Assembly: GCF_036365525.1 (NCBI RefSeq)
Contig: NC_090380.1
Span: 82,407,658-82,471,657 of the forward strand
Length of the DNA stretch: 64,000 nt
Source of the DNA: Heterodontus francisci
Lineage: Eukaryota
Direction of reading: 5' to 3'
Shown here: one piece after another, positions 24,712 through 50,854 of the stretch
How positions within the stretch are numbered: position 1 is the stretch's first letter
How the letters are laid out: the number at the start of each line of letters is the position of its first letter
Made by a program: the position numbers and the translations under genes
Notes under the pieces: model-generated
The model's database searches: none
What the model saw: only the letters and a program-made list of their open reading frames with translations
Told to the model about the DNA's origin: nothing

Positions 24712-24875
24712 TCAACCTTCTGAAAAAGTATTTTCATATACAACCAATGGAATATGTCGAATAAAACTATAGTTAGAATTTGAATTTCGATTAGAGTGCT
24801 GACATTCTGAGGCAGTCGTTTCTTTTCTTGATCCAGCGACAAAATTAACATAGATCTGAATGTCTTCAGAATCAA
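24712..24875 (-). CDS. probable terminal cytoplasmic exon of the IgSF receptor (VDSEDIQIYVNF...SNYSFI...VVYENTFSEG*)
   Basis: Strong acceptor tttttctttcattttag|TT, phase 1 matching the TM donor. 54 aa with three tyrosine motifs, then a stop, then AT-rich unique 3'UTR-like sequence. Linkage to the TM exon is inferred. Confidence 0.6.
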
Positions 24876-25883
24876 CTAAAATGAAAGAAAAATTGACTAA
24901 AAGTAAATTGCTGTCATTTAATTCATTCTGTGATATAAATACAACAAAAGAACATAAAATCTCAGAGGAATCAGTATCAATGCTCTGAATGAATGTTGTA
25001 AAACCCAAAGCAAACTGACACGGAAAGCAGATTTTATCATTTTGTATGAGTGTATGAAGTTTGCCATCTGCTAATGAGACTCTTGTTCTGTCATTGCTAG
25101 CAAAACCATCACTCAGTTTTAGTCACTTGAAAAATTACTCAGCTAAGGCAACAAGAACAGTCTTTCAAGAAGAGTTTTTCAAATTCCTTTTTAAATTTGT
25201 AGCTGCCTGTCAATTAATTGTTTTAAGAAGAGTGTTGTAATTATTTGTTTCACAGTCCTGAGCCATATAATGTAAGAATAGTCACAAATCAATACTATAT
25301 GTTGTATGATTCACAGAGATCTATACTCTTGGAGGTTTACATGTGATTGGTTGCCTTTCTTTGGATGCTGGGAAGGTTAGGTAGACTCAACAATTTGTGT
25401 ATGGTCTGAGGAAGGAATAGCTTAATGAGTGAATGGTCAATTTGTTTCATATCTTTTTAATAATTATTGCCGAACAAACTCATTTCTTCCTGTCAAGTGT
25501 ATACTTCTCACTTGGTTTTATGTTCTTTCTGCACCAGTATGCAACATCCTCAAATTAAATGTTGTACCTGAGCGAATGTGCTTATACTGAACTCTACAAG
25601 AAGTTTTGTCGTGTAAACTGTATCTGTACCTGTACTGCACCCAGTATGACGGTGGAGAATAGCAGAAGTGACCTTATCGATGTAGCAATTCACAGGTACA
25701 GTGAAGAATATCCCCTGCTAACAGTGTCAGCCAAAAGCTGGGCTAAATCCAATGTCAATATAAACTTAAATTTTTGACTCTGAATGTGTCTTTGTGTAAA
25801 GTAATTACAGCTCTAGGTTAAATTGCCAGGATATTTTGGGAGACAGTCTAATGCGAATAGTTAATGATACAATCTGAAACATT

Positions 25884-28430
25884 GGGCCGAATTTTAACAG
25901 GCTGTTTTAGATGGTGCGGTCGGGTGTGGGGGGGGGGGGTGTGGGGGGGTGCATTAAGTAGGGATGGAAGGTGTTGGACAAGAAGTCTGATGTTGTGACG
26001 TCCCTTCCACATTTTATTGTCGGCAGCCAACATGGAGGGCGGGCTTCACACATTCATGAGGTGGGAAGCCAATTAAGGTACTTAACATCCCAATACACTG
26101 CAATTTCAGTGTTTCAAAACTTTCTGATGGCACACAGGAACCATGGGACTTCAGGGCCTCGCCTGGTGAAAGGAGGTGACAGTGTTGGCTTCACTGGGAA
26201 GCCATTGGGTGAGGCAGCATTGCTTGGCAGGAAAGGTGGAGGAGGAGGGGATCATCGGGAAGCACTGTAAGGAGTGGGGGCTAATGTGGCAGAATTGTGG
26301 GGAGCCATACCAGGGTGGCATCAGGGAAGTGCCACCTCATCAGAGGTCATAAGAAAGGAGAGGGAGGAGGGTCTGTTTGATCTGAAGGCCTTGCACTTAA
26401 AGAGAGGCAACCTCACATGGGCCTCATTCACCCTGGCTTCGAGGCTGCCATGAAGGAGGAGCAGCAGCAAAGAGGGAGGGAGGAGCATGAACTGGCAAGG
26501 GCAGCAGTGCAGTCTTGAGGCTCACAGGAAGGTCAGCTTCAGCCACTGAAGGCTAGAGAAGGATGCAGAGGGGCCTGCCAGCTGGTTCCAGCACTCAGAA
26601 GAAGTTACCCTCCAGAGAGGGACTACTGGCTGAGGCTCGGCTACCTGCAGATGTCCAAGCGGCAGTGTCTCCGAAGACTCTGCCTCTCCAGGGGGGCTGT
26701 CACTGATCAGTGGGCCATGATTTAGGACCAGCTGAGGCCCATGGGACTTGTTGGCTACCCAATGCCTGTAGCGCTGAAAGTCACCATGTCACTGAACGTC
26801 CAGACCACTGGATCATTCCAGGGATCCACTGGAGATATGTGTGGGATCTCTCAGTCTGCAGCAAGGAGGTCACCAATGACTTGTTCAGGACAGCCAGTGA
26901 ATATCTGTGCTTCCGCACTGATTCAAACAGTCAAGCTGAGAGGGTGATAGGAATTGGGCCCATTGCTGGATTCCCCCAGGTGCAGGGGGTCATCAACTGC
27001 ATGCATGTGGCCTTCAAGGTTCCCACAGACCAGCCTGCTGCCTTCCTTAACTGGACAGGCTTCCAATCCCTCAACATACAATTGGTCTGCAGGTGTGTGC
27101 ACGATACATGGGAAGCAGCCACAACGCCGACAGGCTAAGGCAGTTCCAGGTGTCAGAACTTTCCCCCCGCACGCCCCCTTGGGGATGGATCCTAGGAGAC
27201 AAGGGCTACCCACTGAGAACATTTTCTGGGGACAGGAGCATACTGGTAATGTTACTGGATTAGTAATCCAGAGATCCAGACTAATGCTTTGGAGACATGT
27301 GTTCAAATCCTACCATGGCAGCTGGGGGAATTTAAATTCAATTAATTAATAAATCTGGAATAAAATGTTAGTCACATTAATAATGATCATGAAAATACCG
27401 GATTTTTGTAAAACAACAATCTTGTTCACTAATGTCCTTTAGGGAAGGAAATCTGCCGTCCTTACCTGGTCTGGCCTACATGTAACTCCAGATCAACAGC
27501 AATATGATTGACTCTTAACTGCCCTCTGATATGGCCTAGCAAACCACTCAGTTGTAGGTAGCTCACCACCACTTTCTCAAGGGCAATTAAGGATGGGCAA
27601 TAAATGCTGTCCTTGCCAGTGACACTCACATCACAAAAATAAATTTTTAAAAACATGGCTACTGATGCCTGAGAGGAACCCATATACGCATGCAGAGGAA
27701 AAAAGGTACAATATTTGCTTTGGATCAACCAGACCGATCATCAAGCAGGCCATTGGTCTCCTAAAGATGAGATTTAGGTGCCTAAATTGATCTGATGGAG
27801 ACCCTTGGTGAGGGTTCGTGTATTGTGGTGGTTTGCTGTGCACTGCACAACCTGGCTGTACAGAGGAGGGAGGAGTTAACCAGTAAGAATATGGTGGAGT
27901 GAGATGCCTCCTCCGATGACAAGGATGCGGAGGATGTTGCCCAGGCAGTGCCAGATGAAGGGCCCCAGGCACAGCAGGAAAGGCGCCATGAGATATAGCA
28001 CAAGGAAGGTAGAAGATGCCCTTATATATTCACAATTCCTTTGAGCCTTACCGTTAAGCAGCCCTGTTGTTGCCTTCTTCCTTCTGTTATGAAGCACCCA
28101 GGTGCACCTCACAGACTGGTAAGGCTGAAGAATTGAACTCTCAGGGCTTGCTCCCTTGCTTCCAGCCCCTTGGGTGGAAGGATTCAAATTAATTACCAAA
28201 GGGCATCAACAACAGAAAGGAGATGTGCTGAATTAATACCATTATTTTATTGCACATCACAACCAATGCACGACTACCCATTTCTATTGCATCTTCACCT
28301 GTGATCCTCTAAGTGAATCAAAGTGCTCTTGTTACATTTTTTAGGGTGCACCTACCTGGTGCTCCTCCTGCGCTGTCAGCTGAGGTGGAGACCAGCTGCT
28401 GATCTTGATGCCCACTGGCTTGGGATGACA
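25884..28430 (+). mobile_element. degraded Harbinger transposon, left part with DDE transposase remnant
   Basis: TIR-like GGGCCGAATTTTA; IAGFPQVQGVINCMHV...GFQSLNIQLVC and [11 protein letters not shown] (HARBI1-like motifs). Confidence 0.8.
27240..27650 (+). mobile_element. SacSINE1/DeuSINE-type tRNA-derived SINE
   Basis: B-box GTTCAAATCC; central tcctttagggaaggaaatctgccgtccttacc domain; tail gggcaattaaggatgggcaataaatgc. Confidence 0.75.
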
Positions 28431-28431
28431 T

Positions 28432-29836
28432 TATTATTCGTTTATGGGATGTGGGCATCACTGGCTAGGCCAGCATTTATTACCCATCCCTAATTGCCCT
28501 GAACTGCTGCAGTCCATGTTAGGTAAGTACACCCATAGTGCTGTTAAGAAGGGAGTTCCAGGATTTTGACCCAGCGACAGTGAAGGAACGGCGATATTGT
28601 TCCAAGTCAGGATGGTGTGTGGCTTGGAGGGGAACTTGCAAGTGGTGATGTTCCCATGCATCTGCTGCCCTTGTCCTTCTAAGTGGTAAAGGTCGCAGGT
28701 TTGGAATGTGCTGTCTAAGGAGCCTTGGTGAGTTGCTGCAGTGCATCTTGTAGATGGTACACACTGCTGCCACTGTGTCGGTGGTGAAGGGAGTGAATGT
28801 GGAAGGTGGTAGATGGGTGCTAATCAAGCGGGCTGTTTTGTCCTGGATGGTGTCGAGCTTCTTGAGTGTTGTTGGAGCTGCACCCATCCAGGCAACTGGA
28901 GACTATCTCATCACACATCTGATTTGTGCCTTGTAGATGGTGGACAGACTTTGGGGAGTCAGGAGGTGAGTTACTCACTGCAGGATTCCTAGCCTCTGAC
29001 CTGATCTTGTAGCCACTGTATTTATATGGCTACTCCAGTTCAGTTTCTGGTCAATGATAACCTCCAGGATGTTGATAGTGGGAGATTCAGCGATGGTAAT
29101 GCCTTTGAATTTCAAGGGGAGATGGTTAGATTCTCTCTTGTTGGAGATGGTCATTGTCTGGCACTTGTGTGGCACGAATGTTACTTGCCACGTACCAGTC
29201 CAAGCCTGGATATTGTCCAGGTCTTGCTGCATTTCTACACAGACTGCTTCAGTATCTGGGGAGTCGCAAATGGTGCTGAACATTGCGCAAACATCAGCGA
29301 ACATCCCCACTTCTGACCTTATGATTGAAGGAAGGTCATTGATGAAGCAGCTGAAGATGGCTGGGCCTAGGACACTACCCTGAGGAACTCCTGCAGTGAT
29401 GTTCTGGAGCTCAGATGATTGACCTCCAACAACCACAACCATCTTCCTTTGCGCTAGGTATGACTCCACCCAGTGGAGGGTTTCCCCCCTGTTTCCCATT
29501 GACTTCAGTTTTGCTAGAGGTCCTTGATGCCATACTCGGTCAAATGCTGCCTTGATGTCAAGGGCAGTGACTCGCACCTCACTTCTTGTGTTCAGCTTTT
29601 TTGTCCATGTTTGAACCAAGGCTGTAATGAGGTCAGGAGCTGAGTGGCCCTGGCGGAACCCAAACTGAGCGTCAGTGAACAGGTTATTGCTAAGCAAGTT
29701 CCGCTTGATAGCACTGTCAATAACACCTTCCATCACTTTACTGATGATTGAGAGCAGACTGATAGGGCAGTAATTGGCTGGATTGAATTTGTCCTGCTTT
29801 TTGTGAACGGGACATACCTGGGCAATTTTCCACATT
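28432..29836 (-). mobile_element. CR1/L2-group LINE 3' portion (RT + 3'UTR)
   Basis: NYCPISLLS, QFGFRQG, LDIKAAFDRV, GVPQGSVLGP, FAD; 3' tail shared with the SINE at 27240-27650. Confidence 0.9.
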
Positions 29837-32800
29837 GACACCCGTCCTCTGGCTGCCTAAGACCTGGAGGGTCCAGACACACTGAGGGCCTCCTGCAAAA
29901 GTGCAGGAACAGCAGGCAACATTCAGGCAGGGAGTCTGGAACTGCAGGCAACATTCAGGCAGGGAGTCTTGAACTGCAGGCAACATTCAGGCAGGGGGTC
30001 TTGAACTGCAGGCAACAATCAGGCAGGTGGTCTGGAACTGCAGGCAACAATCAGGCAGGGGGTCTGGAACTGCAGGCAACAATCAGGCAGGGAGTCTGGA
30101 ACTGCAGGCAACAATCAGGCAGGGAGTCTTGAACTGCAGGCAACAATCAGGCAGGGGGTCTGGAACTGCAGGCAACAATCAGGCAGGGAGTCTGGAACTG
30201 CAGGCAACAATCAGGCAGGGAGTCTTGACATGCAGGCAACAATCGGGCAGGGAGTCTGGAACTGCAGGCGACATTCAGGCACGGGGTCTGGAACTGCAGG
30301 CAACAATCGGGCAGGGGGTGAGGAACTGCAAGCAACATTCAGTCAGGGAGTCTGCAACACCAGGAAACATTCAGTCAGGGGCTCTGGAACACCAGACAAC
30401 ATTCAGTCAGGGGCTCTGGAACACCTGGCAACATTCAGTCAGGGGCTCTGGAACACCAGGAAACAGTCAGGGGCTCTGGAACACCAGACAATATTCAGCC
30501 AGGGACTCTGGAACACCAGGCAACATTCAGTCAGGGGCTCTGGAACACCAGACAAAATTCAGTCAGGGGCTCTGGAATACCAGACAACATTCATTCAGGG
30601 GCTCTGGAACACCAGGATACAATCAGGGGCTCTGGAACACCAGACAATATTCAGTCAGGGGCTCTGGAACACCAGCAAACATTCAGTCAGGGGCTCTGGA
30701 ACACCTAACAACATTCAGTCAGGGGCTCTGGAACACCTGACAACATTCAGTCAGGGGCTCTGGAACACCAGGCAACATTCAGTCAGGGGCTTTGGAACAC
30801 CAGACAACATTCAGTCAGGGGCTCTGGAACACCAGACAAAATTCAGTCAGGGGCTCTGGAAAACCGGGCAACATTCAGTCAGGGGCTCTGGAACACCTGG
30901 CAACATTCAGTCAGGGGCTCTGGAACACCAGCAAACATTCAGTCAGGGGCTCTGGAACACCAGACAACATTCAATCAGGGGCTCTGGAACACCGGAAAAC
31001 ATTCAGTCAGGGGCTCTGGAACATCAGGCAACATTCAGTCAGGGGCTCTGGAACACCAGCAAACATTCAGTCAGGGGCTCTGGAACACAAGGCAACATTC
31101 AGTCAGGGGCTCTGGAACACCAGCAAACATTCAGTCAGGGGCTTTGGAACACCTGACAACATTCTGTCAGGGGCTTTGGAACACCAGGCAACATTCAGTC
31201 AGGGGCTTTGGAACACCAGACAACATTCAGGCTGGGGTTCTGGAACATCAGGAAACATTCAGTCAGGGGCTCTGGAACACCAGGCAACATTCAGGCTGGG
31301 GTTCTGGAACACCAGGAAACATTCAGTCAGGGGCTCTGGAATACCAGACAACATTCAGTCAGGGGCTTTGGAACACCAGACAACATTCAGTCAGGGGCTT
31401 TGGAACACCAGACAACATTCAGTCAGGGGCTTTGGAACACCAGACAACATTCAGTCAGGGGCTTTGGAACACCAGGCAACATTCAGTCAGGGGCTTTGGA
31501 ATACCAGGCAACATTCAGTCAGGGGCTTCGGAACACCAGGCAACATTCGGTCAGCGGCTTTGCAACACCAGACAACATTCAGTCAGGGGCTCTGGAACAC
31601 CAGGCAACATTCAGTCAGGGGCTTTGGAACACCAGACAACATTCAGTCAGGGGCTTTGGAACACCAGGCAACATTCAGTCAGGGGCTTTGGAACAACAGG
31701 CAACATTCAGTCAGGGGCTTTGGAACACCAGACAACATTCAGTCAGGGGCTTTGGAACACAAGACAACATTCAGTCAGGGGCTCTGGAACACCAGGCAAC
31801 ATTCAGTCAGGGGCTTTGGAACACCACAACATTCAGTCAGGGGCTTTGGAACAACAGGCAACATTCAGTCAGGGGCTTTGGAACACCAGACAATGTTCAG
31901 TCAGGGGCTTTGGAACACAAGACAACATTAAGGCAGGGGCTTTGGAACAACAGACAACATTAAGGCAGGGGCTTTGGAACAACAGGCAACATTCAGTCAG
32001 GGGCTTTGGAACACCAGACAACATTCAGTCAGGGGCTTTGGAACACAAGACAACATTAAGGCAGGGGCTTTGGAACAACAGACAACATTCAGTCAGGGGC
32101 TCTGGAACACCAGGCAACATTCTGTCAGGGGCTCTGGAACACCAGGCATCATTCCGTCAGGGGCTCTGGAACACCAGACAACATTCAGTCAGGGGCTCTG
32201 GAATACGAGGCAACATTCAGTCAGGGGCTCTGGAACACCAGGAAACAATCAGGGGCTCTGGAACACCAGACAATATTCAGTCAGTGGCTCTGGAACACCA
32301 GCAAACATTCAGTCAGGGGCTCTGGAACACCTAACAACATTCAGTCAGGGGCTCTGGAACACCTGACAACATTCAGTCAGGGGCTATGGAACACCAGGCA
32401 ACATTCAGTCAGGGGCTTTGGAACACCAGACAACATTCAGTCAGGGGCTCTGGAACACCAGACAAAATTCAGTCAGGGGCTCTGGAAAACCGGGCAACAT
32501 TCAGCCAGGGGCTCTGGAACACCTGACAACATTCAGTCAGGGGCTCTGGAACACCAACAAACATTCAGTCAGGGGCTCTGGAACACCAGACAACATTCAG
32601 TCAGGGGCTCTGGAACACCGGAAAACATTCAGTCAGGGGCTCTGGAACATCAGGCAACATTCAGTCAGGGGCTCTGGAACACCAGGAAACATTCAGTCAG
32701 GGGCTCTGGAACACAAGGCAACATTCAGTCAGGGGCTCTGGAACACCAGCAAACATTCAGTCAGGGGCTTTGGAACACCTGACAACATTCAGTCAGGGGC

Positions 32801-35800
32801 TTTGGAACACCAGGCAACATTCAGTCAGGGGCTTTGGAACACCAGACAACATTCAGGCTGGGGTTCTGGAACATCAGGAAACATTCAGTCAGGGGCTCTG
32901 GAACACCAGGCAACATTCAGGCTGGGGTTCTGGAACACCAGGAAACATTCAGTCAGGGGCTCTGGAATACCAGACAACATTCAGTCAGGGGCTTTGGAAC
33001 ACCAGACAACATTCAGTCAGGGGCTTTGGAACACCAGACAACATTCATTCAGGGGCTTTGGAACACCAGACAACATTCAGTCAGGGGCTTTGGAACACCA
33101 GGCAACATTCAGTCAGGGGCTTTGGAATACCAGGCAACATTCAGTCAGGGGCTTCGGAACAACAGGCAACATTCAGTCAGCGGCTTTGCAACACCAGACA
33201 ACATTCAGTCAGGGGCTCTGGAACACCAGGCAACATTCACAGGGGCTTTGGAACACCAGACAACATTCAGTCAGGGGCTTTGGAACACCAGGCAACATTC
33301 AGTCAGGGGCTTTGGAACAACAGGCAACATTCAGTCAGGGGCTTTGGAACACCAGACAACATTCAGTCAGGGGCTTTGGAACACAAGACAACATTCAGTC
33401 AGGGGCTCAGGAACACCAGGCAACATTCAGTCAGGGGCTTTGGAACACCAGACAACATTCAGTCAGGGGCTTTGGAACAACTGGCAACATTCAGTCAGGG
33501 GCTTTGGAACACCAGACAACATTCAGTCAGGGGCTTTGGAACACAAGACAACATTAAGGCAGGGGCTTTGGAACAACAGACAACATTCAGTCACGGGCTC
33601 TGGAACACCAGGCAACATTCTGTCAGGGGCTCTGGAACACCAGGCAACATTCCGTCAGGGGCTTTGGAACACCAGACAACATTCAGTCAGGGGCTTTGGA
33701 ACACAAGACAACATTAAGGCAGGGGCTTTGGAACAACAGGCAACATTCAGTCAGGGGCTTTGGAACACCAGACAACATTCAGTCAGGGGCTTTGGAACAC
33801 AAGACAACATTAAGGCAGGGGCTTTGGAACAACAGACAACATTCAGTCAGGGGCTCTAGAACACCAGGCAACATTCAGTCAGGGGCTCTGGAACACCAGG
33901 AAACATTCAGTCAGGGGCTCTGGAACACAAGGCAACATTCAGTCAGGGGCTCTGGAACACCAGCAAACATTCAGTCAGGGGCTTTGGAACACCTGACAAC
34001 ATTCAGTCAGGGGCTCTGGAACACAAGGCAACATTCAGTCAGGGGCTCTGGAACACCAGCAAACATTCAGTCAGGGGCTTTGGAACACCTGACAACATTC
34101 AGTCAGGGGCTTTGGAACACCAGGCAACATTCAGTCAGGGGCTTTGGAACACCAGACAACATTCAGGCTGGGGTTCTGGAACATCAGGAAACATTCAGTC
34201 AGGGGCTCTGGAACACCAGGCAACATTCAGGCTGGGGTTCTGGAACACCAGGAAACATTCAGTCAGGGGCTCTGGAATACCAGACAACATTCAGTCAGGG
34301 GCTTTGGAACACCAGACAACATTCAGTCAGGGGCTTTGGAACACCAGACAACATTCATTCAGGGGCTTTGGAACACCAGACAACATTCAGTCAGGGGCTT
34401 TGGAACACCAGGCAACATTCAGTCAGGGGCTTTGGAATACCAGGCAACATTCAGTCAGGGGCTTCGGAACAACAGGCAACATTCAGTCAGCGGCTTTGCA
34501 ACACCAGACAACATTCAGTCAGGGGCTCTGGAACACCAGGCAACATTCACAGGGGCTTTGGAACACCAGACAACATTCAGTCAGGGGCTTTGGAACACCA
34601 GGCAACATTCAGTCAGGGGCTTTGGAACAACAGGCAACATTCAGTCAGGGGCTTTGGAACACCAGACAACATTCAGTCAGGGGCTTTGGAACACAAGACA
34701 ACATTCAGTCAGGGGCTCAGGAACACCAGGCAACATTCAGTCAGGGGCTTTGGAACACCAGACAACATTCAGTCAGGGGCTTTGGAACAACTGGCAACAT
34801 TCAGTCAGGGGCTTTGGAACACCAGACAACATTCAGTCAGGGGCTTTGGAACACAAGACAACATTAAGGCAGGGGCTTTGGAACAACAGACAACATTCAG
34901 TCACGGGCTCTGGAACACCAGGCAACATTCTGTCAGGGGCTCTGGAACACCAGGCAACATTCCGTCAGGGGCTTTGGAACACCAGACAACATTCAGTCAG
35001 GGGCTTTGGAACACAAGACAACATTAAGGCAGGGGCTTTGGAACAACAGGCAACATTCAGTCAGGGGCTTTGGAACACCAGACAACATTCAGTCAGGGGC
35101 TTTGGAACACAAGACAACATTAAGGCAGGGGCTTTGGAACAACAGACAACATTCAGTCAGGGGCTCTAGAACACCAGGCAACATTCTGTCAGGGGCTCTG
35201 GAACACCAGGCATCATTCCGTCAGGGGCTCTGGAACACCAGACAACATTCAGTCAGGGGCTCTGGAATACGAGGCAACATTCAGTCAGGGGCTCTGGAAC
35301 ACCAGACAACATTCAGGCAGGGACTCTGAAACACCAGACAACATTCAGGCAAGGGCTCTGGAACATCAGGAAACATTCAGTCAGGGGCTCTGGAACACCA
35401 GGCAACATTCAGTCAGGGGCTCTGGAACATCAGGAAACATTCAGTCAGGGGCTCTGGAACACCAGGCAACATTCAGGCTGGGGTTCTGGAACACCAGGCA
35501 ACATTCAGTCAGGGGCTCTGGAACACCAGGAAACATTCAGTCAGTGGCTCTGGAACACAAGGCAACATTCAGTCAGGGGCTCTGGAACATCAGGAAATAT
35601 TCAGTCAGGGGCTCTGGAACACCAGGCAACATTCAGGCTGGGGTTCTGGAACACCAGGAAACATTCAGTCAGGGGCTCTGGAACACCGGACAACATTCAG
35701 GCAGGGGCTCTGGAATACCAGACAACATTCAGTCAGGGGCTTTGGAACACAAGACAACATTCAGGCAGGGGCTTTGGAACACCAGACAACATTCAGTCAG

Positions 35801-40881: not shown

Positions 40882-41330
40882 TAGCTATGAAGAGAGGTTG
40901 AGTAGATTAGGATTATTTTCATTAGAAAGACGGAGGTTGAGGGGGGACCTGATTGAGGTGTACAAAATCATGAGAGGTATAGACAGGATGGATAGCAAGA
41001 GGCTTTTTCCCAGAGTGGGGGTTTCAATTACTAGAGGACACGAGTTCAAAGTGAAAGGGGAAAAGTTTAGGGGGGATATGCGTGGAAAGTTCTTTACGCA
41101 GAGGGTGGTGGGCACCTGGAACGCATTGCCAGCGGAGGTGGTAGATGCGGGCACGATGGAGTCTTTTAAGATGTATCTAGACAGATACATGAATGGGCAG
41201 GAAGAAAAGAGATACAGAACCTTAGAAAATAGGCGACATGTTTAGAGAGAGGATCTGGATCGGCGCAGGCTTGGAGGGCCGAAGGGCCTGTTCCTGTGCT
41301 GTAATTATCTTTGTTCTTTGTTGTTCTTTG
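40882..41330 (+). mobile_element. CR1 3' fragment inside the satellite (copy 1)
   Basis: SYEERLSRLGLFSLERRRLRGDLIEVYKI...FFTQRVVGTWNALP; (GTTCTTT)n tail. Confidence 0.93.
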
Positions 41331-41846
41331 TATTCTGTCAGGGGCTCTGGAGCATTTGGTAACATTCAGTCAGGGGCTCTGGAACACCAGGCAACATTCA
41401 GTCAGGGGCTCTGGAACATCAGGAAACATTCAGTCAGGGGCTCTGGAACACCAGGCAACATTCAGGCTGGGGTTCTGGAACACCAGGAAATATTCAGTCA
41501 GAGCCTCTGGAACACAGGCAACATTCAGGCAAGGGCTTTGGAACACCAGACAACATTCAGGGAGGGGATCTGGAATACCAGACAACATTCAGTCAGGGGC
41601 TTTGGAACACCAGACAACATTCAGTCAGGGGCTCTGGAACACCTGACAACATTCAGTCAGGGGCTCTGGAACACCAGCAAACATTCAGTCAGGGGCTCTG
41701 GAACACCAGACAACATTCAGTCAGGGGCTCTGGAACACCAGACAACATTCAGTCAGGGGCTCTGGAAAACCGGGCAACATTCAGTCAGGGGCTCTGGAAC
41801 ACCAGGCAACATTCAGTCAGGTGCTCTGGAAAATCGGGCAACATTC

Positions 41847-42295
41847 TAGCTATGAAGAGAGGTTGAGTAGATTAGGATTATTTTCATTAGAAAGACGGAG
41901 GTTGAGGCGGGACCTGATTGAGGTGTACAAAATCATGAGAGGTATAGACAGGATGGATAGCAAGAGGCTTTTTCCCAGAGTGGGGGTTTCAATTACTAGA
42001 GGACACGAGTTCAAAGTGAAAGGGGAAAAGTTTAGGGGGGATATGCGTGGAAAGTTCTTTACGCAGAGGGTGGTGGGCACCTGGAACGCATTGCCAGCGG
42101 AGGTGGTAGATGCGGGCACGATGGAGTCTTTTAAGATGTATCTAGACAGATACATGAATGGGCAGGAAGAAAAGAGATACAGAACCTTAGAAAATAGGCG
42201 ACATGTTTAGAGAGAGGATCTGGATCGGCGCAGGCTTGGAGGGCCGAAGGGCCTGTTCCTGTGCTGTAATTATCTTTGTTCTTTGTTGTTCTTTG
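41847..42295 (+). mobile_element. CR1 3' fragment inside the satellite (copy 2, near-identical)
   Basis: 965-bp offset from copy 1 with the same junctions; one visible substitution (RG->RR). Confidence 0.93.
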
Positions 42296-43929
42296 TATTC
42301 AGTCAGGGGCTCTGGAGCATTTGGTAACATTCAGTCAGGGGCTCTGGAACACCAGGCAACATTCAGTCAGGGGCTCTGGAACATCAGGAAACATTCAGTC
42401 AGGGGCTCTGGAACACCAGGCAACATTCAGGCTGGGGTTCTGGAACACCAGGAAATATTCAGTCAGAGCCTCTGGAACACCAGGCAACATTCAGTAAGCG
42501 GCTTTGGAACACCAGGCAACATTCAGTCAGGGGCTTTGGAACACCAGACAACATTCAGGCAAGGGCTTTGGAACACCAGACAACATTCAGGGAGGGGATC
42601 TGGAATACCAGACAACATTCAGTCAGGGGCTTTGGAACACCAGACAACATTCAGGCAGGGGCTTTGGAACACCAGACAACATTCAGTCAGGGGCTTTGGA
42701 ACACCAGACAACATTCAGTCAGGGCTTTGGAACACCAGACAACATTCAGTCAGGGGCTTTGGAACACCAGACAACATTCAGTCAGGGGCTTTGGAACACC
42801 AGACAACATTCAGTCAGGGGCATTGGAACACCAGACAACATTCAGGCAGGGGATCTGGAACACCAGGCAACATTCAGTCAGGGGCTTTGGAACACCAGGC
42901 AACATTCAGTCAGGGGCTTTGGAACACCAGACAACATTCAGTCAGGGGCTTTGGAACACCAGACAACATTTAGTCAGGGGCTTTGGAACAGCAGACAACA
43001 TTCAGTCAGGGGCTCTGGAATACCAGGCAACATTCAGTCAGGGGCCCTGGAATACCAGGCAACATTCAGTCAGGGGCTTTGGAACACCAAGCAACATTCA
43101 GTCAGGGGCTCTGGAATACCAGGCAACATTCAGTCAGGGGCTCTGGAATACCAGGCAACATTCAGTCAGGGGCTCTGGAACTCCAAGCAACATTCAGTCA
43201 GGTGCTCTGGAATACCAGGCAACATTCCGCCAGGGGCTCTGGAATACCAGGCAACATTCAGTCAGGGGCTTTGGAATACCAGACAACATTCAGTCAGGGG
43301 CTCCGGAATACCAAGCAACATTCAATCAGGGGAACAGGAATGCCAGGCAACATTCAGTCAGGGGCTTTGGAACACCAGGCAACATTCAGTCAGGGGCTCT
43401 GGAATACCAGGCAACATTCAGTCAGGGGCTCTGGAATACCAGGCAACATTCAGTCAGGGCTTTGGAACACCAGGCAACATTCAGTCAGGGGCTCTGGAAC
43501 ACCAGGCAACATTCAGTCAGGGGCTCTGGAACACCAGGCATCATTTATTCAGGGGCTCTGGAATACCAGACAACATTCAGTCAAGGGCTTTGGAACACCA
43601 GGCAACATTCTGTCAGGGGCTCTGGAATACCAGACAACATTCAGTCAGGGGCTTTGGAATACCAGACAACATTCAGTCAGGGGCTTTGGAACACCAGACA
43701 ACATTCAGGCAGGGGATCTGGAATACCAGGCAACATTCAGTCAGGGGCTTTGGAACACCAGACAACATTCAGGCAGGGGATCTGGAATACCGGGCAACAT
43801 TCAGTCAGGGGCTCTGGAATACCAGGCAACATTCAGTCACGGGCTTTGGAACAGCAGGAAACATTCAGGCAGGAACTCTGGACCAGCAGACAGCAGTCAG
43901 GCAGGGGTTCTGGAACACCAGGCAGTATT

Positions 43930-44103
43930 GAATGCAGAATTGGCAGCCTGTTAAATATAGTGCCATGTGCTTCCACCCCCTCTATTTAAATTAGCCCCTG
44001 TGCATAATATTGCAGGGGCTCAGTGGCAGCACTTCCATGTCGGAAGGCCACTGAGTTCAAAGCGTGCCACCGCAGAGCACGGCATGCGAATAAAATCAAG
44101 ACC
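43930..44103. mobile_element. Harbinger-type terminal segment
   Basis: Reverse complement aligns by eye with the element start at 53222-53330; ends TAAAATCAAGACC. Confidence 0.65.
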
Positions 44104-44137
44104 ATGTTAAGACAGCATACTAACCCACTACACCCAC

Positions 44138-44179
44138 CTATCAGTTATGCATCCCCTGCATGGATCCATCTACTGGAAC
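44138..44179 (-). CDS. candidate 42-nt juxtamembrane exon containing an in-frame TAA (GSSRWIHAGDA*)
   Basis: Acceptor ctttctgacttaattcag|GT and donor ATAG|gtgggt, phase 1-1. It would lie only ~130 nt from the TM donor if the intervening Penelope insertion were removed. TAA at 44147-44145. Confidence 0.4.
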
Positions 44180-44213
44180 CTGAATTAAGTCAGAAAGATA
44201 GTGCAAACATTGA

Positions 44214-46099
44214 AATAAAAGCAAAATACTGCAGATGCTGGAAATCTGAAACAAAAACAAAAAGTGCTGGCAAAACTCAGCAAGTCAGGCAGTATCTGTG
44301 GAGAGAAGCAAAGTTAACGTGTTAGGTCTGTGACCTTTCATCAGAACTAGCAAAGGTTAGAAAGGAATTAGGTTTTAAGCAAGTGAAGGGAAGGGGGGTG
44401 GGGGAGAGAAGAAAGGCGAAGGTGTTTGATCAGGCAGAGGGTGATTAAATAACAAAGCTGTCATGGGACAAAGACAAAGAGTGTGTTAATGCTTGTGGTG
44501 AAAGACAAAGCATTAGTCCAGAGAGACTGTTAATAACAGAATAATGAGTAGATCTGACCACATGAAAAGCAGGCACATGGTTAAAAAATGAAATATTTAA
44601 AAAAGAGCTAGTCATGCTCTGAAGTTATTGAACTCAATGTTCAGTCTGCAAGGTTGTGGAGTGCCTAATTGAAAGATCAGGTGCTGCTCCTCGAGCTTGC
44701 GTTGATGTTCACTGGAACACTGGAGCAGGCCAAAGACAGAAATGTTGGCATGAGAGCGTTGTGGGGGTTGCGGGGAGGGGTGGGGTAGTGTTGAAATGGC
44801 AAGCAACAGGAAGTTCGGGGTCATGCTTTTGGACTGAGTGGAGGTGTTCAGCAAAGCGGTCACCCAATCTTCATTTGGTCTCCCCAATGTAGAGGAGACC
44901 ACATTGTGAGCAGCGAATACAGTATACTAAATTGAAAGAAATACAAGTACAAGTATTCCTGTCCACTCTATCTAGGCCCCTCAGAATTATGTACACCTCA
45001 ATTAAATCACCCCTCAGCCTCCTCTGTTCTAAGGAAAACAGCTCTAGCCTATCCAATCTTTCCTCATAGCTTCAACTTTCAAGCCCTGGCAACATTCTTG
45101 TAAATCTCCTCTGTAATCTCTCCACAGCAATTATGTCCTTTCTGTCAGCATTCCAAAGGGATTGTTCCCTCCGTGACACCCTGGTCCACTCCTCCATTAC
45201 CCCCAACTCCTCCTCCTTAACTACAATGTCTACATCAACCCTCTCCAGAGGAACCCGCTCTCCCATTGGTACTCAGAACTGAATACCGGTTAGAAAGTGG
45301 GATGCCCTCTGGGAACTCCTGCACTACCTGCCTTGACCATCTTGTCTGTCTGGCAGTCACACAGTCCCTCTCTGCCTGTGCTGTTTTCAGCTCCAGGGTG
45401 ACTGCCCCCTGAAACGTGCTATCCATGTAGTTCTCTGCCTCACGGATGCGCCACAATGACTCCGAAACCCGGAGCTCAAGCTTCTGCAGCAGTGACACTT
45501 GCTGCAGATGTGTTTGTATAGGGCACATGGTGCGTCCATGACTCAGTCCAAAAGCATGACTCCGAGCTTCTGGTCGCTTGCCATTTCAACACCCCCCTGC
45601 TCTCATGCCAACATTTCTGCCTTTGGCCTGCTCCAGTGTACCAGTGAACATCAATGCAAGCTCGAGGAGCAGCACCTGATCTTTCGATTAGACACACTAC
45701 AGCCTTACGGACTGAACATTGAGTTCAATAACTTTAGAGCATGACTGGCCTTTTTTTAATATTTTATTTTTTAACCATGTGCCTGCTTTTCATGTAGTCA
45801 GAGCTGTTCATTATTCTAATATTAACAGTCTCTCTGGACTAATGCTTTGTCTTTCACCACAAGCATTAACACATGCTTTGCCTTTGTCACAGGACAGCTT
45901 TGTTATTTAATCACCCTCTGCCCAATCAAACACCTTTCCCTTTGTTCTCTCCCCCACTCCCCTCCCCTTGCTTAAAACCTAATTCTTTTCTAACCTTTGC
46001 TAGTTCTGATGAAAGGTCACAGACCTAAAATGTTAACTTTACATCTCCACAGATGCTGCCAGACCTACTGAGTTTTACCAGCACATTTTGTTTTTGTGT
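44214..46099. mobile_element. Penelope-like element with inverted arms and 15-bp TSD, containing CR1 fragments
   Basis: TAGTGCAAACATTGA at 44199-44213 and 46100-46114; GIY-YIG motif NLVYCIRCSQCGLLYIGETK; C-terminus RKLEEQHLIF..GT.QP..LNIEFNNFR on both strands. Confidence 0.88.
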
Positions 46100-46208
46100 T
46101 AGTGCAAACATTGATACTGACTCCATTTTCACACGGTCAGTTAAAAGCTATCCATCGGCCTCAACTTTGATGATTTGAAAGCAAAGGCTCTAATAATCTG
46201 GATCTTAC

Positions 46209-46298
46209 CTTTTCTTGAATACTTCAACAGTAAATAGCCAACGACAGTTACTAGGGTTAGGCATAGAAAAGCAAGCACCCACCATATATACACTCTGC
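46209..46298 (-). CDS. IgSF V-C1 receptor exon 4 (transmembrane)
   Basis: 90-nt phase 1-1 exon (tttttattacag|GC ... AAA G|gtaaga). Encodes RVYIWWVLAFLCLTLVTVVGYLLLKYSRK: a ~22-aa hydrophobic helix followed by basic stop-transfer residues. Confidence 0.85.
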
Positions 46299-46861
46299 CT
46301 GTAATAAAAAAGGAAACCCTTTGAATTAATGGCTTCATCACCAGCAGGCCATCTGGTAACTAATACAGTAAATTTTTTCCAAGATCAAATATATTTTACT
46401 GTTCTTGTTTATACTGATCCACTAAACATAGAAACATCTGTGTTCCAGCAGTGTAAATTGAGCATAAAGTTAACCAGCTTAAGGCATGGTATTTTAGAAT
46501 ATACTCCCAAGTAAAATGGCTAATGCAGTGTCAATTAACTCCTGGATAACAAAAAACTGGATGGATGTTTGGTTTGTAACAGGGTTGAGCGTTATAAGTA
46601 GTTGATGGAATGATGGAATGCTGTCCATAAGTCAGGGGTAATTAGTGGAGAGTGAGACAGGAGCAGGCCGAAGGTAAATGTTGGTGTATGGGGAGGGAAG
46701 AAAGTGGTCAGTGATTTGCAATGAGTGTGATCTGTGGCAGGTGATGCCTACATTTTCCTTGTGGGCCTGGGAAAACTCTTCGCTCTGCAGACCAGTTTGT
46801 TGCTTATGGGGCAGCTGCTGTAGGCACCCGTTGTCTTCCAGGTTAAGATAATGATAGGATC

Positions 46862-47010
46862 CTTTTTTTTATTCTTTCATGGGATGTGAGCATTGCTGGC
46901 AAGGCCAGCATTTGTTGCCCATACCATAACTGCTCTTGAGAAGGTGGTGGTGAATGGCCTTCTTCAACTGCTGCAGTCCATCTTGTGTAGGTACACCCAC
47001 AGTGCTGTTA
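46862..47010 (-). mobile_element. 3' tail fragment of the SacSINE-partner LINE/SINE
   Basis: Matches 28440-28545. Confidence 0.65.
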
Positions 47011-47481
47011 ATGTAAATGAACTTGATTTGCATAAATGTAAGAGTTGTTCACCTGAGTCATGGAATGGAGCCATTCCCTGTCGGTCATGAGGTGTTAAAA
47101 TTTCCATCTTAGTTTTGTACTACTTTCTTTTGCTAGCGTGTAAACTTAATTCATAAAAATAAATGTAACATGTAGGTTTAGCCAGAGCAATCAGAGAGAA
47201 CTGGAGTGCACAGTGGGCGAGTTGCTCAGTGTTAATATTTTAGTAAAAAGGATTCATTATTTCTGTACTTTTCATGTTCATGGCTACTAAGACAGTAAGT
47301 TTTGAAACACAGGAGATACCAGGTCTACTTATGGAATCTGCAATTTTCTGTAAATGGCTAATATAGTGTTGGAAGATAGAATGAACCTGAATACTACCCA
47401 GACCGTTTCATTTTCTGGTTAAAAAGGAACAGAGAGTGATTTAAAAGTGAAGAAGGGAAGAAAACTGTAAAACTGAAATAC

Positions 47482-47790
47482 CTTCATGCTGTCCATCAAA
47501 TGGTATGGTTATTCTCTTAATCAGAGGACTTTGCAACATTGAGTGATTCACATGACATGAATATATATCCTCCTTCTGCCAGTCAGAAAGGTTAATATAA
47601 CTTGTTCTGGAATTGCTGTTGTTTGACATCATAGTAATTTCAGAGTTAATCCATGCTGAGCCTTCCTTTCCTTCTTTTCTCCACCTCAGTTGGATGTTGT
47701 CAGGATAGAAATTCTCTGCTCTACAAACGAGTTGTATGCAACAGCCGTTTTCAGGCCGGGGAAGAAATTTAACTTCCACCTCTGGAGGAG
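47482..47790 (-). CDS. IgSF V-C1 receptor exon 3 (C1-set domain)
   Basis: 309-nt phase 1-1 exon (ttttcttcaccaag|CT ... GAA G|gtattt). C1 hallmarks: APPEV, LVCRAENFYPDNIQLRW, YSCHVNH. Confidence 0.9.
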
Positions 47791-47959
47791 CTTGGTGAAG
47801 AAAATGCAACAAGCTTTATGAAATTTTGCAAAATTATAGATGTTACTTTATTTACCTTTGGGAAAAAACCCATTGTGCATGTTGTTCTCTCAGCTTAATG
47901 CTGTGCATTGATTATATAATAGACAGAAAAACATATTAGTTACGAGGAAGGTTTGTGTT

Positions 47960-49025
47960 GGAGTTCCCCAGGTGTCAGTGTTAGGACCCTTGCTCTTCCT
48001 GATATATGTAATTACCTCGACCTTGGTGTACAGGACACAATTTCAAAGTTTGCAGATGATACAGAACTTGGAAGCATTGTGAACTGTAGAACTTCAAAAG
48101 GATGTAGACAAGTTGATGGAATGGGCAGATAAGTGGCAAGTGAAGTTCAATGCAGAGAAATGTGAAGTGATTCATTTTGGTAAGAAGAGCATGGAGAGAC
48201 AATATAAAATAAAGGGTACAACTCTAAAAGGGGTGCAGGAGCAGAGGGACCTGGGTGTATATGAGCATAAGTCAGTGAAGATGACAGGACAGGTTGAGAG
48301 AGCGGTTAATAAAGCATACAGTATCCTGGACTTTATTACTAGGAGCATAGAGTACAAGAGCAAGGAAGTTATGTTGAACTTGTATAAGACACTAGTTCGG
48401 CCTCAGCTGGAATATTGTGTCCAATTCTGAGTGCTGCACTTTAGGAAAGATGTGAAAGCATTGCAGAGAGTGCAGAAAAGATTCATGAGAATAGTTCCAG
48501 GGTTGAGGAACTTCAGTTACGAAAATAAACTGGAGAAGTTGGGACTGTTTTCCTCAGAGCAGAGAAGGCTAAGAGGTGATTTGATAGAGGTATTCAAAAT
48601 TATGAGGGGGAAACTGTTCCCACTCATGAAAGAATCGAGAACCAGAAGGCACAGATTTAAAGTAATTGCTAAAAGAAGCAAAAGCGAGACAAAGAGAAAC
48701 TTTTCCACTCATGAAAGGATCGAGAACGAGAAGGCACAGATTTAAAGTAATTGGTAAAAGAAACAAAAGCGAGACAAAGAGAAACTTTTTCACACAGCGA
48801 GTGGTTAAAGTCTGGAATGCACTGCCTGAGACTGTGATGGAGGCAGGTTCAATCGAGGCATTCAAAAGGGATTTTGATAGTTATCTGAAAAAGAAGAATG
48901 TGCAGGGCTATGGGGATAAGATGGAGAAATGGCACTAAATGAATTGTTCATTCGGAGAGCGGAAGCAGACACGAAAGGCCAAATGGCCTCCTTCTATGCT
49001 GTAACAATTCTGTGATTCTGCGATG
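47960..49025 (+). mobile_element. CR1 LINE 3' portion in the V-C1 intron
   Basis: WADKWQVKFNAEKCEVIHFG, LYKTLVRPQLEYCVQF, WNALP; internal ~80-bp duplication near 48610-48780; attctgtgattctg tail. Confidence 0.92.
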
Positions 49026-49184
49026 TGGATAATAATCCTAAGAAATTTCTTTACAAAGATAGTAACAATTCATCTAACTTATGACCAGAAAAGACAATTA
49101 TTAGGTGAAAATACAACAAATTTATGTTATCAATACAATTGCATAGTAATATATAACATATATATTTCATATAATAATTCATAC

Positions 49185-49556
49185 CTTCTACTATAAGGCT
49201 TGTTGTGTCCCCTTGTATTTCGTGGGTAGGTGGTGGTATAAGGAATACAATCCTACAGTAATAAAGGTCTGCGTCATTTAATTGGAGATCTCGGATGAAA
49301 AAGTGAGTAACATTAGCACTGAGCTCCAAAGAAATGTTCACTCGACTGTTGCATTCAGAACTCCATGTCGGCATCTTATTCGTATAAAGTATTCTACATA
49401 GAGGCTTTTTCCACATATTCCTCCACCAGGAAACAGACATCATTTCTGCCTTGGATCGATTGTACCAGTAGGAATAAGTGATGTTAACGTTTTCTCCCTT
49501 TACTGCTCTGAGAATAGTTGGAGTTTGGAGAACTTGGTCTTCACTACATGTCAAAA
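49185..49556 (-). CDS. IgSF V-C1 receptor exon 2 (V-set domain with germline J-like G strand)
   Basis: 372-nt phase 1-1 exon (aacag|TT ... GAA G|gtatga). V-set motifs: VLQTP, GENVNIT, VSWWR, IRDLQLNDADLYYC, then LIPPP...QGDTTSLIVE. The B-strand Cys position is Tyr. Confidence 0.9.
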
Positions 49557-50710
49557 CTGTTCCCATGTAAAATCAAAACAGATGAGCATTGTCAGTTAAA
49601 AACTATTCAACTATTTCTCTGTGAATCTGCTCAGTTACTTAAAGACATGATTTTAATATTAAAATTGAAATGATAATTCTTACTGAGCAAGAAATTACAT
49701 GGGTTCTGTAGATCTGCATAAGTTGTGTTCATTTTTTTCTTTTGTTTTGAATCAAAGTTTGATTCTAAGAAACAATGAAATCAAGGTATGAAACCTAGAT
49801 GAACTGTACAATCAATCATGGAAAAGCATTGTCACTGCTTGTTTTAATAATACTAATTTGTTATAGGGAGAGGTTTGTAATATTAGTTTGAAAGACCAAG
49901 ATATTTGTAATATCAATGTGCTTTGTCAAAAGAGGTCTAAAATATCATTGTTTGATTCAATGAGAGTTTAATGCCTTTCCAATTAAGTCAGGTACATTGA
50001 AATGCAGCATTAAGATTGTTGCCAGCAAAATAACTGATTCGGTTATTTCTCATGTTCAAACATTAACCAGTGCAAGGATCCTGCATGGTTCTGCTCTATT
50101 CCTAACATCAATGCGTCTTCTTGGTGAATTTATATCTCTTACTGTGCTGGATAGTCTACACACTGCTAAAACAAAATTGAAACTATGCATTGCTTGTACT
50201 GGAGAGTTTTCGACAAGTTTAATACCTTCAAAAGTCTGCAAGTGCCTGTTTCAAAAGCACAGCTCACCTATCACCATGCTAACTGTGGGGATATGTTCAT
50301 AATGCACCAGACACGACAAGATTTAGAATGAAAGTTTTTGAACTTTAATTGATGTTTAAATAAAATTACATTTAAAAACTGGATAGCAGGAAATAAGATT
50401 GACAAGATTAATACCATTGCATTACCAGTCACATCTTAACATATTTTTCTGCAGACAAATGCTTCATGAAACATGGTTTCCTCTTCAAATTCGTGACATA
50501 TTCCTTTCTAAATAATTTAGTTTTCTGTGAAAAAAATACAGACCAACACCCGGTGGTGTCCTCTGCGATATTTAGGCCACCTGAAAGTTTGGCAAAAAAA
50601 CCTGCAAGGCCAGGAACTTCAGTGACAGAAAAATGGCAGGAACTTAAAAATGTTTTGCAGACTGTTCTCTCAAAATCACTAGCATTATAAGAATAAATAA
50701 GCATCCTTAC

Positions 50711-50765
50711 CTACAGTAACCATGAGGAGAATCCACTTGGTAAAACAGTTAATGAATAAAGACAT
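50711..50765 (-). CDS. IgSF V-C1 receptor exon 1 (leader/signal peptide MSLFINCFTKWILLMVTV)
   Basis: ATG at 50765 in AAAATG context. 18 codons + 1 nt, ending at a strong phase-1 donor G|gtaagg. Joins the V exon in frame to give hydrophobic ...ILLMVTVVLTCS-EDQVLQTP. Confidence 0.75.
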
Positions 50766-50854
50766 TTTGCCTAGCACCAGCTCAATTGACAAGTTCAGTT
50801 TTGAGACAGGGATAGCAGCAGCTTCTGCTAAAAAGGGGAAATGTATCTTTGTGG

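What the first reader, a model, noticed from the sequence alone, without database searches (positions are those of the whole stretch)
24712..50765. Non-rearranging antigen-receptor-like VJ-C1 receptor gene with a CD28-like PPP loop and its own tyrosine-motif tail
Seen: five minus-strand exons (55+372+309+90+164 nt = 330 codons), all joined by phase-1 GT-AG introns, encode leader-V-C1-TM-cytoplasmic tail. V and the J-like G strand (QGDTTSLIVE, a degenerate GxGTxLxV) are in one exon with no flanking RSS. Established: C1-set domains are largely restricted to Ig, TCR, MHC/B2M, tapasin, SIRP and B7-H6-like proteins. Germline-joined VJ(-C1) genes (NKp30, CD28 family, PRARP-type) are considered relatives of the pre-RAG antigen-receptor ancestor. 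The FG loop YYCRIVFLIPPP resembles CD28/CTLA4 YxCKxExMYPPP, but those receptors lack a C1 domain. Inference: this may be an uncharacterised cartilaginous-fish receptor combining TCR-chain-like V-C1 geometry, a CD28/TMIGD2-like ligand loop and direct signalling motifs.
Basis: partly seen in the sequence, partly recalled or inferred. Interest (0 to 1): 0.88.

Follow-up and report, generated by a model that had tools for sequence, protein, structure and literature searches.

The report
Shark V-C1 receptor with CD28-type loop
This is a real, expressed horn-shark gene for a non-rearranging membrane receptor (V domain with a CD28-like PPP loop, one C1 domain, tyrosine-motif tail); it is already in the public annotation as "uncharacterized" and belongs to an old, unnamed or PRARP-like family shared by sharks, bony fish, amphibians and turtles.

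Summary
All five minus-strand exons exist with GT-AG, phase-1 junctions. RNA contigs join leader, V, C1 and TM exons exactly. The tail exon is backed by the public Heterodontus francisci model (P0053) and by matching tails in other sharks. That model adds one 117-nt exon (28168-28052) that the orthologues lack. No RSS is present.

The V exon is V-set. Its closest single-domain relatives by sequence are CD28 and CD28-like proteins, with YxC-x6-PPP in register. The next exon is a clear C1-set domain. The tail carries conserved YxN, ITIM-like and YxN motifs.

The gene is not shark-specific and not a one-off. It is one lineage (A: chimaera, sharks, paddlefish, carp) of an ancient family. The other lineages are B in cartilaginous fish and C in sturgeon, gar, catfish, caecilian and turtles.

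All members are annotated "uncharacterized", "SIRP-like" or "Ig light chain-like". The family probably equals or neighbours PRARP (Fu et al. 2019), which I could not test. The likely function is a co-signalling receptor; this is inferred.

The scan has noted other non-rearranging VJ-C1 receptors in this genome, one of them 37 kb beyond this window.

The parts
50711..50827 (-). Exon 1: 5' UTR (at least to 50826/50827) and signal-peptide coding part (ATG at 50765, 55 nt of CDS, donor GT at 50710)
   Evidence: Sequence. RNA contigs end at 50826/50827 and join 50711 to 49556. AF2 gives helix 2-21.
49185..49556 (-). Exon 2: germline-joined V domain including the J-like G strand (GDTTSLIVE); it lacks the canonical B-strand Cys
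   Evidence: Pfam V-set 36 bits. AF2 pLDDT 89.8. RNA contigs cover it exactly. No RSS.
49228..49236 (-). PPP codons of the F-G loop (…YYCRIVFLIPPP…), nearly invariant across the whole family
   Evidence: Aligned in register with the CD28 MYPPPY loop. P126 and P128 are invariant and P127 is kept in at least 90% of 30 family members.
47482..47790 (-). Exon 3: C1-set domain, with an extra Cys-Cys pair just before the B-strand Cys
   Evidence: Pfam C1-set 47.2 bits. Best single-domain PDB scores are UrIg2 C1 at 34.2 bits and Ig kappa CL at 30.7 bits. RNA contigs.
46209..46298 (-). Exon 4: stalk end, uncharged transmembrane helix and basic stop-transfer (KYSRK)
   Evidence: Sequence. AF2 helix 244-276. 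RNA contig piece 46209-46297 ends exactly at the donor.
28052..28168 (-). Optional 117-nt exon (39 codons, phase 1-1) present in the public model P0053 only; absent from all orthologues; lies in transposon-rich intron sequence
   Evidence: tblastn of P0053. Coordinates and AG/GT. Alignment gap in all other species. Use in RNA was not checked.
24712..24875 (-). Last coding exon: cytoplasmic tail with stop; the 3' UTR continues downstream
   Evidence: Sequence. P0053 maps here. Homologous tails in four other sharks.
24841..24852 (-). YVNF, a membrane-proximal YxN motif (Grb2/GADS-type consensus)
   Evidence: Conserved as YVNV, YVNF or YANF in group A and as VYEN in paddlefish and carp.
24760..24777 (-). 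SNYSFI, an ITIM-consensus motif (S/I/V/L-x-Y-x-x-I/V/L)
   Evidence: Conserved in group A. The homologous position carries IYSLL, IYTLL or IYSMI in groups B and C.
24724..24744 (-). VVYENTF, a C-terminal second YxN motif
   Evidence: Conserved as IYENTF or IYQNAF in group A sharks; lost in Heptranchias.

Best explanation
The region is an intact, transcribed Heterodontus francisci gene for a type I membrane IgSF receptor. From the N terminus it has a signal peptide, a germline-joined V domain, one C1-set domain, an uncharged TM and a disordered tail. The tail carries three conserved tyrosine motifs: YxN, ITIM-like, YxN. The V domain carries the CD28/CTLA-4-type F-G loop (YxC-x6-PPP) and a C'-D cysteine pair. 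It has lost the canonical B-strand cysteine, and its J motif is degenerate (GxTT instead of GxGT). The gene is the 'A' lineage of an ancient jawed-vertebrate family of V(IPPP)-C1 receptors. The second shark lineage (B) lies on the same chromosome. The family is probably the PRARP family or a close relative of it. Inferred mechanism: the membrane-distal PPP loop binds a cell-surface IgSF ligand, with a B7-like protein as the obvious candidate. Tyrosine phosphorylation of the tail then recruits SH2 proteins (Grb2/GADS-type at YxN, SHP-type at the ITIM-like site). That would make it a co-signalling, checkpoint-like receptor and not an antigen receptor. Shown: gene structure, expression, domains, motifs, family and its age. 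Inferred: ligand, dimer state, and the direction of signalling.
For: Splice sites and phases. RNA contigs joining four exons, with empty unique introns. Public model P0053 maps 100% to the window. Pfam V-set and C1-set above their cut-offs. Best single-domain hits of the V exon are CD28 in the PDB (E 7e-5, PPP in register) and a paddlefish 'CD28-like' protein among 1.84 billion representatives (P0023). Pfam's CD28/ICOS-type model V-set_2 scores 19.6 bits here and 27-33 bits in group B, with a cut-off of 28. PD-1 and CTLA-4 are the top non-antibody Foldseek hits. Orthologues with the same architecture and tail occur in sharks and chimaera. Family members occur in sturgeon, paddlefish, gar, catfish, carp, caecilian and turtles. 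The tree has three starred clades, with paddlefish and carp inside clade A. IPPP, the C' and D cysteines and the tail YSxI/L motif are conserved family-wide. The A and B genes sit on the same chromosome-size contig in Heterodontus, Carcharodon, Stegostoma and Heptranchias; for Callorhinchus only the B gene's contig is on record.
Confidence: 0.7

Rival explanations
1. It is one chain of a germline-encoded, TCR-like heterodimer. The A chain would pair through its C1 (and V) domain with the linked B paralogue, and the pair would act as a non-rearranging antigen or pattern receptor.
For: C1-set domains normally pair (established for Ig, TCR and MHC). The family profile's best solved match is the UrIg2 V-C1. 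The A and B genes share a chromosome in four species. A scan note reports a VJ-C1 receptor 37 kb beyond the window.
Against: Both chains carry their own TM and signalling tails. My searches found B/C-type genes but no A-type gene in rays, skates, the caecilian and turtles. There is no conserved stalk cysteine. Nothing here shows pairing.
Confidence: 0.15
2. It is a SIRP-family paired receptor, as several automatic annotations say ('tyrosine-protein phosphatase non-receptor type substrate 1-like').
For: V-C1 architecture and an ITIM-like tail. NCBI uses SIRP-like names for the Heptranchias, sturgeon, gar and turtle members. SIRP-gamma appears among the C1 hits.
Against: SIRPs have V-C1-C1, whereas this gene has one C1. 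SIRP is not among the top V hits, while CD28 is. The invariant IPPP loop is not, to my knowledge, a SIRP feature. Other automatic names for the same family ('Ig kappa-like', 'tapasin-related', 'class I antigen-like') show that the labels are generic.
Confidence: 0.08
3. It is a B7/butyrophilin-type ligand (a V-C ectodomain with a signalling tail, like B7-H6) and not a receptor of the CD28 side.
For: The AF2 two-domain model fits the BTN3A1 ectodomain best (TMt 0.53, rmsd 7.6 A). Some family members give weak Pfam C2-set_2 and C2-set_3 hits.
Against: C1-set is by far the best C-domain model (47-78 bits against 17-39). The V has a J-like G strand and a PPP loop, which are features of the receptor side. 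B7 V domains are not among the sequence hits.
Confidence: 0.05
4. It is a germline-joined immunoglobulin light-chain or TCR cluster, or a decaying pseudogene among transposons.
For: Sharks have germline-joined IgL clusters (PMC2193156). Group B proteins are auto-named 'Ig kappa/lambda light chain-like'. The locus is full of LINEs and satellite DNA.
Against: The reading frame is intact. It is spliced and expressed. It has a TM and a conserved tail. It is conserved from chimaera to carp. There is no RSS.
Confidence: 0.02

Closest known systems
[quoted passage not shown]
   Same: As I recall the abstract (not held here): non-rearranging VJ exon, V-C1-TM-tail in bony fish, amphibians and reptiles, an ITIM-like tail, two linked paralogues, and no place in any known receptor family. 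The family found here has all of these features and the same taxonomic spread.
   Different: To my knowledge PRARP was not reported from cartilaginous fish. The turtle members here lack a GxG J motif, whereas chicken PRARP is said to have a canonical one. PMC10751288 mentions PRARP among 'VJ genes in the MHC', and I could not test linkage. Sequence orthology is untested.
CD28/CTLA4/ICOS/CD28H/CD28X family (PMC11599192)
   Same: The F-G loop YxC-x6-PPP is in register with CD28 and with the CD28X signature YxCx6PPPx4/5GxG. A C' cysteine aligns with that of CD28. The tail has a YxN motif, like YMNM. CD28-type proteins are the nearest single-V relatives.
   Different: All nine described members have a single V domain, whereas this one has a C1 domain. 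It has no stalk cysteine and no YxxxxT TM motif. V-set_2 is below its cut-off (19.6 against 28). The B-strand cysteine is lost.
UrIg / UrIg2 (non-rearranging shark Ig; PMC12227049, PDB 9dmx)
   Same: Germline-joined VJ followed by C1-set domains. It is the best solved match of the family profile, with V-C1 aligned in one 92.5-bit stretch.
   Different: UrIg2 has nine C1 domains and no PPP loop, and UrIg is described as an antibody. This gene has one C1 and a tyrosine-motif tail.
SIRP family
   Same: V with a J-like strand, C1-set domains, and ITIM tails in the inhibitory members. Automatic annotation uses this name.
   Different: SIRPs have three Ig domains (V-C1-C1). They have no PPP loop, and their V is not among the best hits.
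NKp30 (NCR3) / B7-H6
   Same: A non-rearranging VJ-type V (NKp30) and a V-C ectodomain with a motif-bearing tail (B7-H6).
   Different: NKp30 has no C domain and signals through a charged TM. B7-H6 is a ligand-side V-C protein. Neither appeared among the sequence hits.

Membership tests
C1-set-containing IgSF | Pfam C1-set above the gathering score | tested here: met
   47.2 bits against a cut-off of 21. 24 of 27 aligned rows match; of the other three, one is the V exon alone and two are single-V CD28-like proteins.
Rearranging Ig/TCR genes | V and J separated and flanked by RSS (heptamer, 12/23 spacer, nonamer) | tested here: not met
   V and the G strand are in one exon. No RSS-like site in the whole window.
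CD28/CTLA4 family | Single extracellular V domain | tested here: not met
   A C1-set exon follows the V exon and is spliced to it in RNA. PMC11599192 states that each member has a single V domain.
CD28/CTLA4 family | P-[P/L]-P motif in the F-G (CDR3) loop after YxC | tested here: met
   YYCRIVFLIPPP aligns with CD28 YFCKIEVMYPPP. The motif is conserved in 30 family members.
CD28/CTLA4 family | Match to the Pfam CD28/ICOS-type V model (V-set_2, PF15910) above 28 bits | tested here: not met
   19.6 bits for this gene. Two group B relatives pass, at 33.4 and 28.7 bits.
CD28/CTLA4 family | Tyrosine signalling motif in the tail (YxNx / YxxM) | tested here: met
   YVNF and YENT are conserved in group A.
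CD28/CTLA4 family | Stalk cysteine or YxxxxT TM motif for homodimers | tested here: not met
   No Cys between C221 and the TM, and no Y-x4-T in the TM.
PRARP | Non-rearranging V(J)-C1-TM-tail with an ITIM-like motif (outside birds) | tested here: met
   Exon model and SNYSFI. The feature list itself is from memory of the abstract.
PRARP | Two linked paralogues | tested here: inconclusive
   A and B share chromosome-size contigs in four species. A scan note places a VJ-C1 gene 37 kb beyond the window, and I could not read that DNA.
PRARP | Sequence orthology to chicken PRARPA/PRARPB | not testable with these tools
   The paper is not held.
SIRP | V-C1-C1 ectodomain | tested here: not met
   Only one C1 exon lies between V and TM, in RNA contigs and in all orthologues.
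UrIg/UrIg2 | VJ followed by several C1 domains, antibody-like | tested here: not met
   One C1 only, with its own TM and tail. It is the best PDB relative by profile, but UrIg2 has no PPP.

The most novel reading that the evidence does not exclude
The V(IPPP)-C1 family is a surviving intermediate between antigen-receptor-like VJ-C1 chains (UrIg/TCR/Ig type) and the CD28/CTLA-4 co-stimulatory family. On this reading the CD28 family arose from such a V-C1 receptor by loss of the C1 exon, so 'signal 1' and 'signal 2' receptors would share one pre-RAG V-C1 ancestor. The shark A and B genes would be its least-changed descendants.
Probability: 0.15. Interest if true: 0.8.

Novelty: new member of a known kind. 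Interest (0 to 1): 0.5.

Why it matters
Non-rearranging VJ-C1 genes are the material used to reason about what the RAG transposon invaded. [quoted passage not shown] A receptor family conserved from chimaeras to turtles couples the CD28-type PPP loop to a C1 domain. Its V-C1 unit looks most like UrIg2. That gives a concrete, testable link between co-stimulatory and antigen-receptor lineages. It also points to a set of uncharacterised candidate checkpoint receptors in fish, amphibians and reptiles. If the family is simply PRARP, the gain is smaller: cartilaginous-fish orthologues, a two-lineage history that predates the bony/cartilaginous split, and the PPP/CD28 resemblance.

Tried and rejected
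1. Complex prediction of the A ectodomain (P0053 23-246) with the B ectodomain (P0065 24-252) gave no verdict (ipSAE 0.06). This is neither support nor evidence against binding.
3. PRARP: the paper is not held, four literature searches found only citations, and no database name contains PRARP.
The UrIg 2023 paper is not held.
5. There is no paralogue of any exon elsewhere in the window. The rest of the window is LINEs, satellites and transposon debris, so it holds no synteny marker.
6. The extra exon is not a repeat within the window, and its flanks give only a sub-threshold Harbinger-type hit. Its origin is open.
7. Whether the RNA contig contains that exon could not be read. The single read-laying run covered 46000-50900 only. 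The contig length fits either reading: it would end at about 23473, at the edge of a common shark repeat, with the exon, or at about 23356 without it.
Exons were searched one by one by reference, and the public model P0053 served as the full-length protein.
9. The findings look-up by sequence for P0065 was blank, which means nothing.


Full report
**What is in the sequence**

| Exon | Coordinates | Length |
|---|---|---|
| Leader | 50765-50711 | 55 nt from the ATG |
| V | 49556-49185 | 372 nt |
| C1 | 47790-47482 | 309 nt |
| TM | 46298-46209 | 90 nt |
| Tail | 24875-24712 | 164 nt with the stop |

Every intron starts GT and ends AG, and every junction is phase 1. The sum is 990 nt, giving a 329-residue protein. 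Intron lengths are 1154, 1394 and 1183 nt, then 21,333 nt.

The long last intron is filled with repeats:
- a 14-kb array of a 32-bp satellite at 29906-43921
- a LINE reverse-transcriptase fragment at 28978-29841
- other transposon debris

Each was searched by reference, and the public full-length model served wherever a whole protein was needed.

**Is it a real gene?**

Yes.
- **Domains.** Pfam calls the second exon V-set (36 bits, cut-off 26) and the third C1-set (47.2 bits, cut-off 21).
- **Public model.** A protein search returned P0053, 'uncharacterized protein [Heterodontus francisci]', 368 aa. It maps at 100% identity to the window's exons. The window is therefore horn-shark DNA and the gene is already annotated.
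- **RNA.** Contigs of about 2.4 kb from three runs of one sample lie on 50711-50826/7, 49185-49556, 47481-47790 and 46209-46297 without a mismatch.
  - Unique intron sequence has zero depth.
  - The contig leaves the genome exactly at the TM donor and continues for 1520 nt outside the stretch I laid.
  - A run from a second study holds V and C1 exon pieces.
- **Tail exon.** It rests on P0053 and on clearly homologous tails in the Chiloscyllium, Rhincodon, Carcharodon and Heptranchias proteins.

One correction is needed. P0053 has an extra exon at 28168-28052 (117 nt, 39 codons, AG/GT, phase 1-1) between the TM and tail exons. No orthologue has it.

**Non-rearranging status**

V and the J-like G strand sit in one exon. 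A scan of both strands of the whole window for heptamer, 12/23 spacer and nonamer found nothing.

**The V domain**

- HMMER against solved structures gives CD28 as the best single-domain match (E 7e-5 to 1e-4). YYCRIVFLIPPP aligns with YFCKIEVMYPPP in register, and the C' cysteine aligns as well.
- In the 1.84-billion-protein representative library, the first single-V hit outside the family is a paddlefish 'CD28-like' protein with a YEDM tail (P0023).
- Pfam's CD28/ICOS-type model V-set_2 scores 19.6 bits here, below its cut-off of 28. The paralogous group B scores 27-33 bits.
- The motif fits the published CD28X signature YxCx6PPPx4/5GxG, except that GxG is GxT.

**The C1 domain and the V-C1 unit**

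The best single-domain scores of the C1 exon are the first C domain of shark UrIg2 (34.2 bits) and Ig kappa CL (30.7 bits). A profile of 30 family members has UrIg2 V-C1-C2-C3 (PDB 9dmx) as its best solved match. There, V and C1 align in one 92.5-bit stretch, and UrIg2 has no PPP. As a unit the ectodomain therefore looks antigen-receptor-like, while the ligand loop looks CD28-like.

**TM and tail**

The TM is uncharged, so there is no sign of adaptor dependence. AF2 predicts a helix at 244-276 and a disordered tail. The tail has three motifs:

| Motif | Type | Conservation |
|---|---|---|
| YVNF | YxN, the Grb2/GADS SH2 consensus (established knowledge) | Conserved across group A; VYEN in paddlefish and carp |
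| SNYSFI | Fits the ITIM consensus | Conserved across group A; homologous position also conserved in groups B and C (IYSLL, IYTLL, IYSMI) |
| VVYENTF | Second YxN | Conserved in group A sharks; lost in Heptranchias |

**The family**

- **Orthologues.** They exist in Chiloscyllium, Rhincodon, Stegostoma, Carcharodon, two Scyliorhinus species, Heptranchias and Callorhinchus. All carry generic or wrong names.
- **Group B.** A second group has INCS, IPPP, a canonical GxGTxLxV, C1, and a tail ending IYxLLGQ. It occurs in sharks, rays, skates, sawfish and chimaera, including P0065 in the horn shark on the same 126-Mb contig.
- **Linkage.** A and B also share a chromosome-size contig in Carcharodon, Stegostoma and Heptranchias. 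For Callorhinchus only the B gene's contig is on record.
- **Scan note.** An earlier scan note (s1-871836) reports a VJ-C1 receptor 37 kb beyond this window. It may be B, but I could not read that DNA.
- **Further members.** They occur in sturgeon, paddlefish, gar, catfish, carp, a caecilian and six turtle species.

A maximum-likelihood tree of 30 proteins gives three starred clades:

| Clade | Members | Support |
|---|---|---|
| A | Chondrichthyan group A plus paddlefish and carp | 98/96 |
| B | Chondrichthyan group B | 100/98 |
| C | Sturgeon, gar, catfish, caecilian, turtles | 97/93 |

The tree is unrooted, so whether B and C are orthologous is inference. Lineage A itself predates the split between cartilaginous and bony fish.

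**What it most likely is and does**

It is a germline-encoded co-signalling receptor. It probably binds a cell-surface IgSF ligand through the invariant PPP loop and signals through phosphotyrosine motifs of mixed type (YxN and ITIM-like). Only the anatomy, expression and conservation are shown; the ligand, the dimer state and the signalling outcome are inferred.

**Comparison with known families**

- **CD28 family.** It fails the defining single-V architecture (PMC11599192), so it works like a CD28-type receptor in its loop and tail but is not a member.
- **SIRP.** It is not a SIRP, because it has one C1 and a different V.
- **Rearranging receptors and UrIg.** It is neither.
- **PRARP.** The best candidate is the PRARP family (Fu et al. 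2019). PRARPs are described, from my memory of the abstract, as non-rearranging V-C1 ITIM-bearing gene pairs in bony fish, amphibians, reptiles and birds. The features I could test fit. I put this identity at roughly even odds.

**Verdict**

This is a new (shark) member of a known kind of gene, non-rearranging VJ-C1 receptors. It has an interesting and apparently unremarked coupling of a CD28-type loop to a C1 domain. The scan has flagged several other non-rearranging VJ-C1 receptors in this same genome, so the class is common there.

Noticed in passing
window 29906-43921: A 14-kb array of about 440 copies of a 32-bp satellite (GGAACACCAGACAACATTCAGTCAGGGGCTCT, 85-90% matches) fills most of the last intron. 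It is interrupted by two near-identical copies of a unit about 965 bp apart (ORFs at 40856-41245 and 41821-42210). It gives long spurious ORFs in three + strand frames.
   Followed up: partly
window 49470-49482 (V exon, B strand) and 47733-47738 (C1 exon): Lineage A proteins lack the canonical B-strand cysteine of the V domain (Y/F instead) while keeping the YYC cysteine. They also have two adjacent cysteines five residues before the B-strand Cys of C1. Lineage B has the normal V pair and no Cys-Cys. The partner of the orphan cysteines is unknown.
   Followed up: partly
window 28052-28168: A 117-nt in-frame exon is used in the public horn-shark model only. It lies in transposon-rich intron sequence and is absent from every orthologue. 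It may be a recent exonisation or an annotation artefact.
   Followed up: partly
window 16820-20011 (+): An intact 1063-aa LINE ORF with endonuclease and reverse-transcriptase domains (Pfam RVT_1 114 bits, Exo_endo_phos 46 bits). It may be a young, active element.
   Followed up: partly
window 9108-10037: A GC-rich minisatellite that is open in all six frames, giving CAPLS- and GERCT-type repeats.
   Followed up: no
window 23465-23485 (-): The 3' UTR region runs into a copy of the common shark repeat that begins AACTGGCATTTATATAGCGCCTTTCAC. The RNA contigs may break there.
   Followed up: no
P0031 (Microcaecilia unicolor, clade C): The caecilian member has lost both canonical V-domain cysteines (KKGF and YSYT) yet keeps IPPP, C1 and the tail IYSMI motif.
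   Followed up: no
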